64,000 nt of DNA from Ostrea edulis (taxonomy: Eukaryota): assembly GCF_947568905.1 (NCBI RefSeq), contig NC_079169.1, forward strand, positions 72,540,001-72,604,000. Reading direction: 5' to 3'. The translations under genes were made by a program, and so were the position numbers. The notes beneath the pieces are model-generated. The model made no database searches. It worked only from the letters and a program-made list of their open reading frames with translations, and was not told the DNA's origin. Within the stretch, counting starts at the first letter, position 1, and each line of letters starts with the position of its first letter. Shown here one piece after another: positions 36,837-62,866 of this stretch.

Positions 36837-37386
36837 GCTTTTGAAATACTCTCAGTATGTTTGTTTTTAGTAACAGTTTTCGAAACCTTTGGCGTTGTGG
36901 AAATGTTTTGTATTCATACATGCATCAACTTTTGTCGATTAGTTAGACTTTCAGAGATGTTATAGGAATAAGATTTACATGAAAAGTGAGTCCTGCATTG
37001 TCCTCAGACGACATACTAGTCTACACATTTCAGATGGACAAATAGACAATATAAGTTTTATACATTTTATTCAACAATCAAAATACAGCACATCCCTACT
37101 GATCTGGTCGTCTTACCCCTGTCAAAAGGAAAGAAGAAAAATCATAAGTATTTGTTCCTCTCTTTCTACACAAACCAAATCTCGAATTGGGTATCTTTAC
37201 ACGGGTATGCTTGGATACAAAAGATATAGTCTTCATGTAATGTTTTGATAAATTTGTCAAGTATTCGAACTCTTAATGATATTTTTAGGTTGATTACCGG
37301 GGATTATATTGCTGAGATCATAGAATAACAAAAACACGCACCTGTTAGTTGCTTACGCTTCCCCCACTCAGCAGTTTATATGGAGT

Positions 37387-37975
37387 CTAACCAATAATGG
37401 GGAGAGCCGTGTTGTTGGTCAAGGCGGTCAACAGAAGGACCAGAGGAACTAAAACAGAAACATTTCTATCTTACAACTGGTCAAATGATTTAAAGGGAAA
37501 ACAAGAAATTTTTCTCTATCGAATTGAAGACATATAGCTTGTAACAAACTTTAGCAAAAACGATTCTTGAATTAATAACAGGTATCAATATTATCAAAAA
37601 TATTATATTAATTTCAAACATTTTATAAGAACTGTTTTCAACTAAAACGATGGCTGAATAAAAAGACTCACTGTAGTTAACAAAGGATGAGAAGGCGGAT
37701 TGTTTGGCGAGTTTGTTCAGCTGGTTTCTCTGTTGGCGGGTCTGGTACCACTCTTGGAGGTATCTTTGTTGGTAGGCCTGTCTACTAGCATAGTTCCCTT
37801 GTCCTCCATACCCGCCACCAAGTCCTCCATACCCGCCGCCAAGTCCTCCATACCCGCCGCCAAGTCCTCCAAGGGCTGAAGTCTGTGATCCTGGATAATA
37901 ATACAGTCCTTCAACCACGACAACGGCCAGTGCGATCACGCAGGGTAAAACCATCAAGATGACGGACTTATTCAT
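37387..37975 (-). CDS. Uncharacterised secreted Gly/Tyr-rich protein P1 (121 aa, 2 coding exons)
   Basis: Exons 37975-37672 and 37448-37387 (phase 1, GTGAGT...TTTTAG). Protein: MNKSVILMVLPCVIALAVVVVEG-LYYYPGSQTSALGG(LGGGYGG)x3-QGNYASRQAYQQRYLQEWYQTRQQRNQLNKLAKQSAFSSFVNY-IPLVLLLTALTNNTALPIIG*. TATA at 38074-38067; 3'-UTR exon from 37118; AATAAA at 37071-37066. Confidence 0.85.
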
Positions 37976-39289
37976 GCTGCTGGTTAGTGTGAGCTGAAAG
38001 CGAATCCCCGACTTGTGGAATACTCAGGTGATGAGAGGAGATTGGTGATGTGCTGGTTCGTCGAGATATATATACCGATTTTTTTGTCGGTTACGTGAAT
38101 TGCGATTCCGGGTGTTACGTCACGGCTTCACAGGTACGTTAAAGTAGTCTGCGTGAAGTAACGATTGTCGAAATGGGGTAACACTTTTTAGGGAAGAGTT
38201 TCTCTGTAATAGGAGCAACCTGTGTAACTTGTGATACTGACTATTTCTATAGGGTATTTCTATAAACGTGGATACGCTGTATTAGTATAGAAAACGACAC
38301 TTCCTTATCAGTTAAATTACTATTGATTTTTGCTACATAAAAATTCTAATAAAATATATTAAGGTCATCCAAAGTATATAGAGTTTAAATTTTTCGCACA
38401 TTCAGAAATACTGATATGTAATTATATGGACGAATTGGTAAATTAATGTCTCTTCCTCAGAAATTTGAAGTTGACAGTTTGCCCTGGGGAGTGGTTCTAC
38501 AACATTGCAATTTACAATCCCGAGAACATATTTCTGTTGTTCATGAATAATGATAATAATAAAATTTATATAGCGCCTTAAATAAAACAAATTACTCTAA
38601 GACGCTTTACAGGGGTAAGAGGAGGAATGCGACGATCAAACAGAATTAAATGAAATTAAATGACAGTATGACATAAGATCAAATTATCAAAATAAAACAC
38701 TATAATTAAGCTAAAAGGTGTTGGGTATTTTTTAGTGTACGTACTCTGTTGTTTTCCCTGTTCTTCGCTAGAATTAATTTTTTTTTAAAATTCCATCGTG
38801 TCTTTCAAATTAATTTTACAAGCATTTTTGTTGAAAATATTAATCCGTTCTTTGTTTGTTTTTAATTTTTTTTTTTAAAATACGTTAAGAAATTCGTTAT
38901 TCCCAAGTGATTCAGAGTTATGAGATCTTTTTTGTTTACAGTTAAACAATTTTTTTAAAATTAATTTGTTGTATTGAGATATTGTGGACTTCGATACTCA
39001 TTGAGTAATGTATTCATTTAATGTCGACTGATACAAATATATATCCATACATATGTATTACATTACAAATGGCAGACATGTACATGTATAAGCAAAATGA
39101 TCCAGTGATTTAAGATTAAAGCTAGGAAATTGTACGTAGTAAAGAAATATCACTAGGCAGGCTCAGGCAACCTCGTGGTCCAGAGCACAGACCCCTAGGC
39201 TATCCCACATAAGTTGTTTTCCAGCAATATTCTAACTGAATTTAACTTGGTGTACAAAGTATTCAAATCCATACAAAACACAAACGACC

Positions 39290-39535
39290 GGTGGCGGTGG
39301 CCCAGTGGTTGTGGCATTCACCTCGCCACGTGGAGACCCGAGGCTGGCGCCACGTCAAACCTTGGAAATTTAACAGGTTGTTCTTTTGGATATCATCTTA
39401 AACACTGAGATAGACGTTGGCACGATAAAGAATCATCACTGCAACGAACGTAAGCGCAGTGCATGTGTCCGAATTCGTGACACTTTACCTAAAGCTTTTT
39501 GACGTCTGGAACGTAAAACAAAATACTAAGAATAC
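39290..39535 (+). mobile_element. Degenerate tRNA-derived SINE
   Basis: GGTGGCCCAGTGG...CATTCACCTCG head and GTTGGCACGATAAAGA..CAC..C body motif. Confidence 0.55.
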
Positions 39536-60150: not shown

Positions 60151-60226
60151 TTACGTCAAACTGCCGTCTGCTGTAGGAGGGTGGGAGAGTATAAAAGCAG
60201 ACTAAACCATCGAAGATTCGTCACTT
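60151..60226 (+). promoter_or_regulatory. Core promoter of P4
   Basis: TTACGTCA (CRE/ATF-like) at 60151-60158, TATAAAAG at 60190-60197 and Inr-like TCACTT at 60221-60226. Confidence 0.7.
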
Positions 60227-60256
60227 GCTCGGTCCAGTCGCCAATCACACACAACC

Positions 60257-60791
60257 ATGAACAAGGCAGTCATTCTCCTCGGCACCTCTTGCCTTCTTGC
60301 CATCGCCATCATGCAGGTGTCCGCTTATTACTATGGCAACTCGATGATGTACGGTGGTGCGGGATATCCTTTATCCATGGCCGGTGGTGCTGGAGGTCTT
60401 GGTGGTGCAGGAGGTCTCGGTGCTCGTAGTAATTACTATGACAACTACTACAGACAGTACGATCGCTACAACCGTGCCCAGGCTACCAGAACTATTGCCA
60501 GATCCATCAATGGTCTCCAAACATCCGCCCTCCTCAGTCTGTGTAAGTTAACATTACTCCTGGACACTTCCAATCGTGTCTTCCCGATATGATGAAATAT
60601 TTAATTTTGAAAGAACATTGATTTAGAGTTTAGGTTATTAATCTTATGTTCTTGTTAATTGGTTTGTCAGATAAATAAGCCAAACATATGTACGATTTTT
60701 TGTTTTAAAGATAAGCTTTCTTTATTTTTCAGTTTCTCTGTTCGGTCTCGCCATGCTTGCCACCAACACCACTGGTACTCTTGCTGGTTAA
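60257..60791 (+). CDS. Uncharacterised secreted Gly/Tyr-rich protein P4 (114 aa, 2 coding exons)
   Basis: Exons 60257-60542 and 60733-60791 (phase 1). Protein: MNKAVILLGTSCLLAIAIMQVSA-YYYGNSMMYGGAGYPLSMAGGAGGLGGAGGLGARSNYYDNYYRQYDRYNRAQATRTIARSINGLQTSALLSL-FSLFGLAMLATNTTGTLAG*. UTR intron 60830-60943; AATAAA at 61007-61012. Confidence 0.88.
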
Positions 60792-62866
60792 GAGAGCTTT
60801 TAAGACATCTTAAAAAGTCCAACTGACAGGTATGTTTGTTTTTATTCTGTTAATAAATTTCTGACTTTCATTATAAAACAAGATGCACGAAAGACTTATT
60901 TTTCAAACTTTACCATTAACAAACAATTCTTCTCCCTTTTCAGGGGTTTGACGACCAGACCAGAGGGTGTTGCTTGATTGTACATTGTATGCTATCTTAT
61001 GTGTTGAATAAAACTCTAAATAAACAAATGATTCTTCTTTGTGCTGATATATGTAAAACCTAAATTCATATCACACAAGCTCTTTGCACTATATGAGTGT
61101 TTGATTATTAGAAGGTCATCAAAATGTTACAACAAATCGGGTTGTTGAATATTGTGAATTTGTAAGTATATATTAAACTCCCAAATCATAAAAAATCAGT
61201 GAAGCATAAGCTGTATTTCATGAGCCATGTTTAATTTCAAATTGTAAATTACGAAATAGTGAGAAAACCCCACGAGTTGGAGACATTTGTTTGTTGGAAA
61301 ATACTAGTTAGCGCTTCATAGAAGGTATGCTGGTGTGAAGCGATAGAAACTCAACAACGTCTACTTTCTTAAAATGTCAGATATAAAAAGATACAAGGCC
61401 AGAAAATAGATTTATAAAAGCATTGAAAAGGCCACGACACTGTTATATAAGCACAAGCCGCAAGGTAGTCATCTAAGAAGTAGAGCCAACTGGGTTGAAA
61501 AAGGCAAAAAACCATCGAAATATTTCTGTGCTTTAGAATCCAGAAATTTTGCTAGCAAAACAATCCCTAGATTAGAAAATAATGAAGGGGGGGGGGGGGG
61601 GGTAATATATGAACAATCTGAAATTTTGAGGGAAACAAAAACTTTTTATGAACTGTTATACAAGAAAACAATTTTCATTTTAACAATGAGTCAAGCTTTA
61701 AGATATTTCTAAACGTTCTAGTATCAATACAAGGGGAAATTACTCTTGAAGAAGCCACCAATACTCTTTATAAAATTAAATCTAAAAAAGTCCGGTATCT
61801 GGTGGGTTTTCTGCCAAATTCTTCAGGGAAACAAAAACTTTTTATGAACAATTATATAAGAAAACTGAAGTAAATAATAGTTTTGATTTTAACAATGAGC
61901 CAAGCTTTAACGATATTCCGAAACTTTCTAATAAAGAATCAGAATCAATAGAAGGGGAAATTACTATTGAAGAAGCCTCCAATACTCTTTACAATATGAA
62001 ATCTAATAAATCCCCAGGATCTGATGGTTTTTCTGCCGAATTCTTCAAAATGTTTTGGAAATATATTGGTATTTTTGTTGTAAGGTCTATCAATTATGGA
62101 GATAGAAATAAAATGTCAATTATACAAAGACATGGTATCACTATATCGCTACCGAAAGGTGACAAGCCAAGACAATATCTAAAGAACTTAAGACCTATCA
62201 ATCTGTTGAATAATGTTTATAAAATTACATCAGACTCAGTGGCTAGTAGAGTGAGACGGTATCTATATAAATTAATCAACCATGTTCAAACAGGTTTTAT
62301 TCCCAATAGATATAAAATGGGAGAAAATACAAGGCTTATTTATAATAGTATGCATTACACTGAGGAAGAAAATATACCTGGTTTATTATTACTTAACGGT
62401 TTTGAAAAAGATTTGATACAGTGTCTTGGGAATTTATTAAAAAAGCACTTACTGTCTTTAACTTTGGCACCGAAATTCAGAAACGAGTTTCATTATTTTG
62501 TAAAGATATTACATATGCAGTGAATGATGGTGGCAGTGGCGTAGCTTCCATTGAGGCAACCGAGGCAGCTGCCTCAGTAAAAAAAAAAAAAAACAACACC
62601 TTTTACGTTGTTAAAATGTCGATAGCTTCTGGGGGCTGTGCCCCCCCCCCCCCGACCCCCTGCCTCAGTAATATTCGAACCCAAGCTACGCCTATGGGTG
62701 GTCATCTGAAAGAATCGATGTTCAGAGAGGGTGCAGACAAGGTGACCTTTTGTCGCCATATCCTTTCTTAATTTGTGCAGAAATGTTAGCAGTTCAGATA
62801 AGATTAAACAAAAATATTAAAGGTATCACTGTAAACAATATAGAAAGGACGGTATCTCAGTGGGCT

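What the first reader, a model, noticed from the sequence alone, without database searches (positions are those of the whole stretch)
37066..61012. All four P genes keep a 3'-UTR intron just inside the NMD-safe distance and a related terminal exon
Predicted donors lie 30 (P1, 37356), 36 (P2, 49790), 39 (P3, 52410) and 38 nt (P4, 60830) after the stop codon. All are below the ~50-55 nt exon-junction NMD threshold (established rule). The last exons are short, start GG(G) and are related. P1 GGGTAAGACGACCAGATCAG matches P4 GGGTTTGACGACCAGACCAG, P2 and P3 share ACATTGCG, and P1 and P4 end GTTGAATAAAA. Retention of a non-coding exon while the coding bodies diverged suggests a post-transcriptional role (inference).
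Basis: partly seen in the sequence, partly recalled or inferred. Interest (0 to 1): 0.7.

Follow-up and report, generated by a model that had tools for sequence, protein, structure and literature searches.

The report
Conserved 3'-UTR intron, oyster gene family
Four neighbouring flat-oyster genes for small secreted proteins each keep an intron 36-45 bases after the stop codon and a short non-coding last exon that selection has held nearly constant across three oyster genera; the structure is well supported, but its link to mRNA quality control is untested.

Summary
The window is Ostrea edulis (chromosome piece C6). P1-P4 are a tandem family of about 115-aa secreted Gly/Tyr-rich proteins found so far only in oysters.

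Each gene has a stop codon inside a roughly 100-nt exon, then a GT...AG interval, then a short last exon starting GGG/GGA and carrying AATAAA.

Orthologous loci from Saccostrea echinata, S. cucullata and two Crassostrea/Magallana-like contigs give 14 gene copies. All 14 keep the same donor and acceptor, 32-45 nt after the stop.
- The interval between them is unalignable and varies from 114 to 392 nt.
- The last exon is 85% identical between Ostrea and Saccostrea, against 58% at four-fold degenerate sites (p = 8e-16).

Within O. edulis only the P1-P4 last-exon match is significant (z = 6.7). The P2-P3 9-mer is marginal (p = 0.04).

A Magallana gigas gene model splices across exactly this junction. 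I found no direct transcript.

The "NMD-safe" reading is consistent but untested. [quoted passage not shown] The assembly gap is intergenic and irrelevant. Verdict: a real new member of a known kind, of moderate interest.

The parts
37672..37975 (-). P1 coding exon 1 (signal peptide, GGLGGGY repeats, Q/R-rich segment)
   Evidence: ORF. It is 100% identical to XP_048730235.1 (P0006, Ostrea edulis).
37342..37448 (-). P1 exon 2: the hydrophobic tail (I)PLVLLLTALTNNTALPIIG, whose first residue is a codon split across intron 1, stop TAG at 37389-37387, then 45 nt of 3' UTR.
   Evidence: P0006 confirms the exon 1 / exon 2 junction. The donor CAG|GTGCGT is invariant in four P1-type copies.
37119..37341 (-). 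P1 3'-UTR intron (223 nt, GT...AG)
   Evidence: Global-alignment identity to orthologues is 32-35%; orthologue lengths are 140-223 nt.
37046..37118 (-). P1 non-coding last exon (GGGTAAGACGACCAGATCAG...TTGAATAAA; AATAAA at 37071-37066). The 3' end is approximate.
   Evidence: It is 81% identical to S. cucullata copy A.
50259..50550 (-). P2 coding exon 1
   Evidence: single copy in the genome.
49791..49888 (-). P2 exon 2: the tail (V)PGILTLLAFSNSTSIPLVG, whose first residue is a codon split across intron 1, stop TAA at 49829-49827, then 36 nt of 3' UTR.
49399..49790 (-). P2 3'-UTR intron (392 nt; TTG|GTAAAC ... ttttcag|GGG)
   Evidence: Identity to Saccostrea is 31-34%; orthologue lengths are 274-392 nt.
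49314..49398 (-). P2 non-coding last exon (GGGCGGTGACATTGCGATGCG...TTTGAATAAA). The 3' end is approximate.
   Evidence: It is 86-89% identical to Saccostrea with no indels.
51494..51553 (+). P3 coding exon 1 (signal peptide MNKAILFIVGTLLAVVIVVH)
   Evidence: Found by homology to the S. echinata exon; 85% identity.
51823..52063 (+). P3 coding exon 2
52312..52409 (+). P3 tail exon: (L)FTLAISLLATNSTGAVAG, whose first residue is a codon split across the preceding intron, stop TAA at 52368-52370, then 39 nt of 3' UTR.
52410..52527 (+). P3 3'-UTR intron (118 nt)
   Evidence: Identity is 30-46%; orthologue lengths are 118-165 nt.
52528..52603 (+). P3 non-coding last exon (GGATGGGCGACCACAGACATTGCGTGATG...CAATAAA). 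The 3' end is approximate.
   Evidence: It is 82-84% identical to Saccostrea.
60257..60542 (+). P4 coding exon 1
   Evidence: Orthologues are XP_061181581.1 and XP_062590113.1.
60733..60829 (+). P4 exon 2: the tail (F)SLFGLAMLATNTTGTLAG, whose first residue is a codon split across intron 1, stop TAA at 60789-60791, then 38 nt of 3' UTR ending CAACTGACAG.
   Evidence: The C-terminus matches the RefSeq models P0002 and P0003.
60830..60943 (+). P4 3'-UTR intron (114 nt)
   Evidence: Identity is 22-28%; orthologue lengths are 114-202 nt.
60944..61032 (+). P4 non-coding last exon (GGGTTTGACGACCAGACCAGAGGG...GTTGAATAAA). The 3' end is approximate.
   Evidence: It is 75-83% identical to Saccostrea. 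The same junction is used by the M. gigas model A0A8W8NFD3.
56197..56375 (.). Assembly gap. It is intergenic, lies between P3 and P4, and is not part of the feature.
   Evidence: N run; 431-bp tandem repeat on its right side.

Best explanation
P1-P4 are four ancient tandem paralogues of an oyster gene family. Each encodes a signal peptide, a Gly/Tyr-rich region, a Q/R-rich segment and a short hydrophobic N-x-T...Gly tail.

The family inherited a stop-codon-proximal 3'-UTR intron from its common ancestor. Splicing joins a 32-45 nt UTR stub to a 70-90 nt non-coding terminal exon.

That exon is under purifying selection along its whole length. Selection is strongest in two places:
- the first ~25 nt after the acceptor, which reads AG|GGR-N1-3-GRCGACCA(G/C/A)A in P1/P3/P4 and GGGCGGTGACRTTGCGATGCG in P2;
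- the ~15 nt ending in the poly(A) signal.

Most likely mechanism (inferred). The last intron and exon act together as an RNA-processing and regulatory module. The terminal 3' splice site and the poly(A) signal define a very short last exon. Paralogue-specific sequences in that exon are read by trans-acting factors (protein or small RNA) that set mRNA stability, translation or localisation. An exon-junction complex placed about 24 nt upstream of the junction would sit about 8-21 nt past the stop. There the terminating ribosome can remove it, so the mRNA could gain the benefits of splicing without becoming an NMD substrate.

Shown: the gene models, the conserved GT/AG boundaries, the divergence of the intron against the conservation of the exon, and the narrow range of spacing.
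Inferred: that splicing occurs in vivo, what the conserved blocks bind, and any link to NMD.
For: - Species and CDS models. P1 equals XP_048730235.1 of Ostrea edulis at 100% identity. The P4 tail exon matches Saccostrea RefSeq proteins.
- Synteny. The order P4, P3, P2, P1 and the gene orientations are conserved in S. echinata and S. cucullata.
- Boundaries. All 14 copies from three genera have GT...AG, 32-45 nt after the stop, with intron lengths of 114-392 nt.
- Global-alignment identity, O. edulis versus Saccostrea: last exon 75-89% (62% for the diverged S. cucullata copy B), 3'-UTR intron 22-46%, exon 1 CDS 64-72%.
- Pooled optimal pairwise identity: last exon 85% (first 25 nt 87%, last 15 nt 95%); four-fold degenerate sites 58%; Fisher p = 8e-16. 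The introns score 54% under this method, which is its noise floor.
- The P1-P4 last-exon similarity within O. edulis has z = 6.7, while exon-1 proteins are 34-39% identical between P1 and P4 or P2.
- The last exon is not coding. Orthologue lengths differ by non-multiples of 3, and no frame stays open across the junction in every copy.
- An independent gene model, Magallana gigas A0A8W8NFD3, ends ...RTSAWSPTDR|GMSTRPGTAP. This is the translation of the UTR stub, the split codon AG|G and the last exon of the Crassostrea-like contig L004. That model therefore uses exactly this donor and acceptor.
- The motif model R1 finds only these four loci as top hits in the 895-Mb genome.
- Genes with Mago, Btz/CASC3 and UPF3 domains are present in the genome.
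Against: - I could find no transcript or junction read. All Logan and ENA contigs recovered for the family are unspliced genomic sequence.
- The M. gigas model that crosses the junction also invents a 53-nt mini-intron to skip the stop codon. It is an imperfect witness.
- AATAAA occurs inside the O. edulis P4 intron (about 60852), so intronic polyadenylation is possible.
- The last exon has no stable or conserved secondary structure (z between -1.3 and +1.0) and no Rfam match. No concrete binding partner can be proposed.
- Conservation of such a short last exon could stem largely from generic splicing and polyadenylation signals.
- The second P1 copy in S. cucullata keeps the intron, but its last exon has diverged (62% identity to O. 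edulis; 70% to its sister copy). The exon sequence is therefore not indispensable.
Confidence: 0.75

Rival explanations
1. The intron and last exon are real, but the 32-45 nt spacing is historical inheritance plus ordinary small-exon constraints and has nothing to do with NMD. The last exon is conserved only because a 70-90 nt terminal exon is almost entirely occupied by generic signals: the 3' splice-site context, exonic enhancers and poly(A) upstream elements.
For: - All copies descend from one ancestral gene, so the spacing is one inherited character.
- The 50-nt rule is uncharacterised in many lineages (PMC6173133).
- Proximal 3'-UTR introns can still elicit NMD in vertebrates, so 'safe' is not absolute (10.1101/677666).
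- The best-conserved parts are those next to the acceptor (87%) and the poly(A) signal (95%).
- There is also a lower bound of 32 nt or more, which NMD evasion does not explain.
Against: - The UTR stub is only 71% identical between Ostrea and Saccostrea, and 64% between Ostrea and the Crassostrea-like contigs. Its length nevertheless varies by at most 5 nt within each orthologue set, while the adjacent intron varies up to about 1.8-fold. This suggests a constraint on length.
- Generic signals are degenerate, yet each paralogue keeps its own specific 20-25 nt block at 87% identity, and the middle of the exon is still 76% identical against 58% at neutral sites.
Confidence: 0.4
2. There is no splicing. 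The 3' UTR is continuous, and the conserved blocks are two separate UTR elements flanking a fast-evolving spacer. Alternatively, the mRNA ends before the distal block, which would then be a downstream DNA element.
For: No transcript evidence was obtainable. AT-rich spacers contain chance AATAAA hexamers.
Against: - In all 14 copies the upstream conserved block ends exactly at a consensus donor (CAG|GTGCGT, AAG|GTAAGT or TTG|GTAAAY).
- In all 14 the downstream block begins exactly after a pyrimidine tract plus AG (13 of 14 are YAG; one is AAG).
- An M. gigas gene model joins exactly these two points.
- The only conserved AATAAA lies at the end of the distal block.
Confidence: 0.07
3. The last exon is coding in an alternative isoform, as in the Magallana gigas model A0A8W8NFD3. 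That model removes the stop with a mini-intron and reads through the junction, so the exon's conservation would be protein-level.
For: The C-terminal 20 residues of P0004 are the translation of the UTR stub plus the last exon. Some frames of some last exons are open.
Against: - In O. edulis P4 all three frames are closed 3-26 nt upstream of the junction.
- Last-exon lengths differ between orthologues by 7, 3 and 11 nt (P4), by 3, 1 and 7 nt (P1) and by 2 nt (P3).
- No frame is open across the junction in all orthologues of any paralogue.
Confidence: 0.04

Closest known systems
[quoted passage not shown]
   Same: The intron lies in the 3' UTR less than 50 nt downstream of the stop codon. Its position is conserved over long evolutionary distances, and an RNA-level regulatory role is suspected.
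   Different: Here it occurs in a lineage-restricted family of small secreted proteins of a mollusc, not in RNA-binding or neuronal regulators. All four paralogues carry it together with a very short conserved terminal exon. There are no expression or NMD data.
The 50-55 nt exon-junction rule of EJC-dependent NMD (reviewed in PMC6173133)
   Same: All 14 junctions lie 32-45 nt after the stop, inside the window in which the terminating ribosome is expected to clear the EJC.
   Different: The rule has not been tested in molluscs. Presence of Mago, Btz and UPF3 genes is necessary but not sufficient. There is also a lower bound to the spacing that the rule does not predict.
Insect 'adult-specific cuticular protein ACP-20' (the name NCBI gives to P1, XP_048730235.1)
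   Same: A signal peptide and a Gly/Tyr-rich low-complexity region.
   Different: No Pfam family was detected at E <= 1 beyond noise, and no chitin-binding domain appeared among the hits. The name appears to be driven by composition. Sequence relatives were found only in oysters.

Membership tests
Stop-proximal 3'-UTR intron (proximal 3'UI) | A spliceosomal intron (GT...AG, pyrimidine tract) located wholly downstream of the stop codon | tested here: met
   All 14 copies have GT...AG. The stop is conserved at the same codon, immediately after the terminal Gly. The interval is unalignable and varies in length, while both flanks are conserved.
Stop-proximal 3'-UTR intron (proximal 3'UI) | Junction less than 50 nt from the stop codon | tested here: met
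   45/45/40/43 (P1), 36/35/32 (P2), 39/39/38 (P3), 38/37/37/37 (P4).
Stop-proximal 3'-UTR intron (proximal 3'UI) | Splicing observed in transcripts | not testable with these tools
   No spliced transcript contig was recoverable. The only indirect support is an M. gigas gene model that uses the junction.
Stop-proximal 3'-UTR intron (proximal 3'UI) | Conservation of the intron position between species | tested here: met
   Ostrea, Saccostrea (two species) and Crassostrea/Magallana-like contigs.
NMD-immune architecture under the EJC 50-55 nt rule | The organism uses EJC-dependent recognition of premature stops with a distance threshold | tested here: inconclusive
   Genes with Mago_nashi, Btz and Smg4_UPF3 domains are present. 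The function of the pathway in molluscs is not documented in the literature I searched.
NMD-immune architecture under the EJC 50-55 nt rule | Lengthening the stop-to-junction distance destabilises the mRNA in a UPF1-dependent way | not testable with these tools
   This requires reporter experiments.
Cuticular protein ACP-20 / chitin-binding cuticle proteins | A recognisable Pfam chitin-binding domain. I recall this as the Rebers-Riddiford type of insect cuticle proteins; that is from my own knowledge and was not looked up here. | tested here: not met
   The Pfam scan of the large coding exon of all four genes at E <= 1 gave only two sub-threshold chance hits (DUF1127, ARM_TT21_5th).

The most novel reading that the evidence does not exclude
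The narrow and conserved 32-45 nt stop-to-junction spacing persists although the stub's sequence is only weakly conserved (71% against 58% at four-fold sites). It may reflect an exon-junction distance rule for NMD operating in a lophotrochozoan. The family-specific GRCGACCAGA-type block at the start of the last exon may be a previously undescribed cis-element. It would be read only after splicing, next to the junction, and would control mRNAs of secreted oyster proteins.
Probability: 0.2. Interest if true: 0.6.

Novelty: new member of a known kind. Interest (0 to 1): 0.38.

Why it matters
3'-UTR introns are rare and are usually discussed as NMD triggers. Conserved stop-proximal ones are a recently recognised regulatory class, so far described in vertebrates.

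This locus offers a clean, compact natural example in a mollusc:
- four paralogues and 14 copies across three genera;
- tiny genes;
- a last exon of at most 90 nt that is clearly under selection.

It could be used to ask whether the exon-junction distance rule exists in Lophotrochozoa, and to find the factor that reads the conserved block.

For annotation, it shows that the M. gigas model A0A8W8NFD3 has mis-assigned UTR as coding sequence, and that the 'ACP-20-like' name is not supported by a domain.

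Tried and rejected
- Rfam scan of 36500-62000 at E <= 1: nothing on any last exon or UTR intron, only sub-threshold miRNA-like hits on transposon-type hairpins.
- Folding of each last exon: no stability beyond shuffles and no shared structure.
- A duplex search between exon 2 and the last exon timed out and was not repeated, so that idea is untested.
- Sequence-only covariance model of the acceptor plus the first 32 nt, searched on the whole genome. The four P genes are the top hits. 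The next hits are a repeat on C8 that does not resemble the family. Only 150 of about 192,000 candidates were scored, so absence elsewhere is not proven.
- Protein searches of the genome with each large coding exon: each gene is single-copy. One extra hit (L009) is a poly-G run and is spurious.
- Looked for spliced transcript contigs through cluster members of the Logan and ENA hits: all read through intron 1 and are therefore genomic.
- Pfam scan and ESM Atlas: no family and no lead; the Atlas model of the protein has low confidence.
- Literature: nothing on this family or on oyster 3'-UTR introns.
- Candidate microRNA seed matches were considered only from memory and rejected as unreliable. 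Not tested.
Exons were searched separately by reference, and the full-length proteins used were database entries.
- Nothing in the window looked human.

Full report
**What the locus is**

The window is AT-rich animal DNA. The large coding exon of P1 is 100% identical to XP_048730235.1, 'adult-specific cuticular protein ACP-20-like [Ostrea edulis]'. The assembly has 895 Mb in 52 pieces, and the window is C6:72540001-72604000. The window is therefore from the European flat oyster.

P1-P4 encode proteins of about 115 aa. Each has an MNK... signal peptide, a Gly/Tyr/Met-rich low-complexity stretch, a Q/R/N-rich segment and a separately encoded tail of about 19 residues: hydrophobic run, N-x-T, terminal Gly.

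Pfam finds no family. Word-based protein searches return only oyster proteins, from Ostrea, Saccostrea, Magallana and unnamed Logan/ENA contigs. Each gene is single-copy in the genome.

**Gene models**

| Gene | Coding exons | Tail exon | Stop codon | Last exon |
|---|---|---|---|---|
| P1 (-) | 37975-37672 | 37448-37342 | TAG, 37389-37387 | from 37118 |
| P2 (-) | 50550-50259 | 49888-49791 | TAA, 49829-49827 | from 49398 |
| P3 (+) | 51494-51553 and 51823-52063 | 52312-52409 | TAA, 52368-52370 | from 52528 |
| P4 (+) | 60257-60542 | 60733-60829 | TAA, 60789-60791 | from 60944 |

The exon 1 / tail-exon junctions are confirmed by RefSeq proteins of O. edulis (P0006) and Saccostrea (P0002, P0003, P0008).

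**Assembly gap**

The N run at 56197-56375 lies in the 7.6-kb intergenic stretch between P3 and P4, beside a 431-bp tandem repeat. No gene model, alignment or measurement here spans it. I did not try to fill it.

**Checking the observation**

The GT dinucleotides, distances and quoted strings are all present. The last exons begin GGG (P1, P2, P4) or GGA (P3) after a pyrimidine tract plus AG. They run 53-69 nt to the end of AATAAA.

Local-alignment scores, with AATAAA removed, were compared with 2000 dinucleotide shuffles:
- P1-P4 is highly significant (z = 6.7).
- The P2-P3 9-mer GACATTGCG is marginal (p = 0.04).
- The other four pairs are not significant.

The claim 'related terminal exons' is therefore proven within this genome only for P1/P4.

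**Orthologues**

The look-up of encoding contigs gave the S. echinata locus (L001: P2, P3, P4), S. cucullata loci (L002 and L003: P4, P3, P2 and two P1 copies) and two Crassostrea/Magallana-like Logan contigs (L004: P4; L005: P1). Gene order and orientation match the window, so all four paralogues predate the Ostrea/Saccostrea split.

Every one of the 14 copies has the same architecture:
- The stop falls at the same codon.
- A GT donor lies 32-45 nt later: P1 45/45/40/43, P2 36/35/32, P3 39/39/38, P4 38/37/37/37.
- An interval of 114-392 nt follows that cannot be aligned between genera.
- The last exon starts after a pyrimidine tract plus AG.

CAG|GTGCGT, 15 nt further on, is invariant in all four P1-type copies and is shared with the P4 orthologues. 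The homologous P1 donor is therefore at 45 nt.

**Selection on the last exon**

| Segment, O. edulis versus Saccostrea | Identity | Method and call |
|---|---|---|
| Last exon | 75-89% (62% for the diverged S. cucullata copy B) | global alignment, |
| 3'-UTR intron | 22-46% | global alignment, |
| Downstream flank | 26-60% | global alignment, |
| Exon 1 CDS | 64-72% | global alignment, |
| Last exon, pooled | 85% (369/436) | pairwise, |
| First 25 nt of last exon | 87% | pairwise, |
| Middle of last exon | 76% | pairwise, |
| Last 15 nt of last exon | 95% | pairwise, |
| Four-fold degenerate sites (copy B excluded) | 58% (168/292) |, as recomputed |
| Codon positions 1 and 2 (copy B included) | 88% | |

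The Fisher test of last exon against four-fold sites gives p = 8e-16. The non-coding last exon thus evolves almost as slowly as non-synonymous sites.

The UTR stub in the tail exon is only weakly conserved in sequence (71%). Its length, however, changes by at most 5 nt within an orthologue set, while the adjacent intron changes up to about 1.8-fold.

With the orthologues aligned, a family-wide pattern appears at the start of the last exon. It reads AG|GGR-N1-3-GRNGAC, with GRCGACCA shared by P1, P3 and P4.

**It is not coding, not a known RNA and not a structure**

- Last-exon lengths differ between orthologues by non-multiples of three, and no frame stays open across the junction in all orthologues. 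In O. edulis P4 all three frames close 3-26 nt before the junction.
- Rfam finds nothing there.
- Folding energies are no better than shuffles, and the predicted structures differ between copies.
- A sequence model of the acceptor plus the first 32 nt recovers the four P genes as the four best hits in the genome. Only a fraction of candidates was scored.

**Evidence for actual splicing**

I found no transcript. All Logan and ENA contigs for the family read through intron 1 and are genomic.

The best indirect evidence is the Magallana gigas model A0A8W8NFD3 (P0004). Its C-terminus, RTSAWSPTDR-GMSTRPGTAP, equals the translation of the UTR stub of L004 (RTSAWSPTD), the split codon AG|G, and the last exon (GLSTRPGTAPL). 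That model therefore joins precisely the predicted donor and acceptor.

By my reading of L004, the model also removes a 53-nt GT...AG piece that contains the stop codon, which turns UTR into 'coding' sequence. The frames are closed in O. edulis. I regard that part of the model as an annotation artefact or a non-conserved isoform.

**Interpretation**

The conserved boundaries, the diverged interior and the conserved flanks are the classic comparative signature of an intron. I give about 0.9 that these are true 3'-UTR introns.

The last exon is clearly constrained. Part of that must be generic, from terminal-exon definition and the poly(A) signal context. However, each paralogue keeps its own specific block, and even the middle of the exon is conserved above the neutral level. 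I therefore favour additional sequence-specific recognition by a protein or small RNA. This is inference.

The NMD idea is compatible with the data:
- All 14 junctions are under 50 nt from the stop.
- The stub shows a length constraint while its sequence is only weakly conserved.
- The genome encodes Mago, Btz/CASC3 and UPF3 domains.

Several points weigh against it:
- The exon-junction mode is uncharacterised in many lineages, and evidence in invertebrates is mixed (PMC6173133).
- All copies share one origin.
- The spacing also has an unexplained lower bound.

I give the NMD-constraint reading about 0.35.

**Comparison with what is known, and novelty**

This is a new member of a known kind, a conserved stop-proximal 3'-UTR intron. 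It occurs in a phylum and a type of gene where none has been described in the literature I could search.

Another first-stage note in this genome (s1-302248, untested by me) reports a similar intron in two GADD45 paralogues. That hints that the architecture may not be rare in oysters.

Exons were searched separately by reference, and full-length proteins came from the databases. No contig looked human.

Noticed in passing
L003:10001-10776 and L003:14962-15718 (S. cucullata P1 copies A and B): The two tandem P1 copies encode identical proteins. Exon 1 is 240/241 nt identical, but identity falls to 83% in intron 1, 73% in the UTR stub, 62% in the UTR intron and 70% in the last exon. This looks like gene conversion confined to the coding exon. 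Copy B keeps the intron and the CAG|GTGCGT donor but has a diverged last exon. S. echinata also has two loci with an identical protein (P0014).
   Followed up: partly
window:37387-37448, 49827-49888, 52312-52370, 60733-60791: The tail exon is strongly conserved in all 14 copies: a hydrophobic run, an N-x-T sequon and an invariant C-terminal Gly directly before the stop. Preceded by small residues, it resembles a GPI-attachment or other C-terminal processing signal. Not tested.
   Followed up: no
L004:1193-1285 compared with protein P0004 (Magallana gigas A0A8W8NFD3): The public M. gigas model appears to remove a 53-nt GT...AG piece that contains the stop codon, and it translates the 3' UTR and last exon. 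This is probably an annotation artefact. The equivalent frames are closed in O. edulis.
   Followed up: partly
window:36520-36921 (-): A 26-27-nt tandem repeat (at least 7 copies) lies directly downstream of P1. One frame reads as proline-rich PITRPLLALP-type peptide repeats; the reading frame is uncertain. It is a separate gene or exon and is not related to the P family.
   Followed up: no
window:47119-47418 and 47380-48843: A 25-nt tandem repeat array (about 12 units) sits inside a unit of about 1.5 kb bounded by long inverted repeats (74 nt at 91%, 45 nt at 84%). It looks like a foldback or MITE-like transposon. Nearby, a hairpin at 48240-48362 scores below threshold for a miRNA family.
   Followed up: no
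window:53222-53336 and 52827-52934: Two near-perfect hairpins (48-nt arms at 96% and 40-nt arms at 85%) lie downstream of P3. The first gives only sub-threshold Rfam miRNA hits (mir-8517, 41 bits against a cut-off of 70). They are probably MITE-type repeats.
   Followed up: no
window:56376-57030: A 431-bp tandem repeat abuts the assembly gap. It is the subject of another first-stage note (candidate hammerhead ribozyme). I confirmed only the repeat spacing.
   Followed up: no
window:40772-41125 and 61996-62523: Reverse-transcriptase-like ORF fragments sharing the motif KSPGSDGF(S)xEFFK. They are decayed retroelement copies between and after the P genes.
   Followed up: no
window:50551-51493: P2 and P3 are arranged head to head about 940 bp apart. 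The same arrangement is conserved in both Saccostrea species, and the 54-60 nt upstream of each ATG is 79-85% identical. This is a likely shared bidirectional promoter region.
   Followed up: partly
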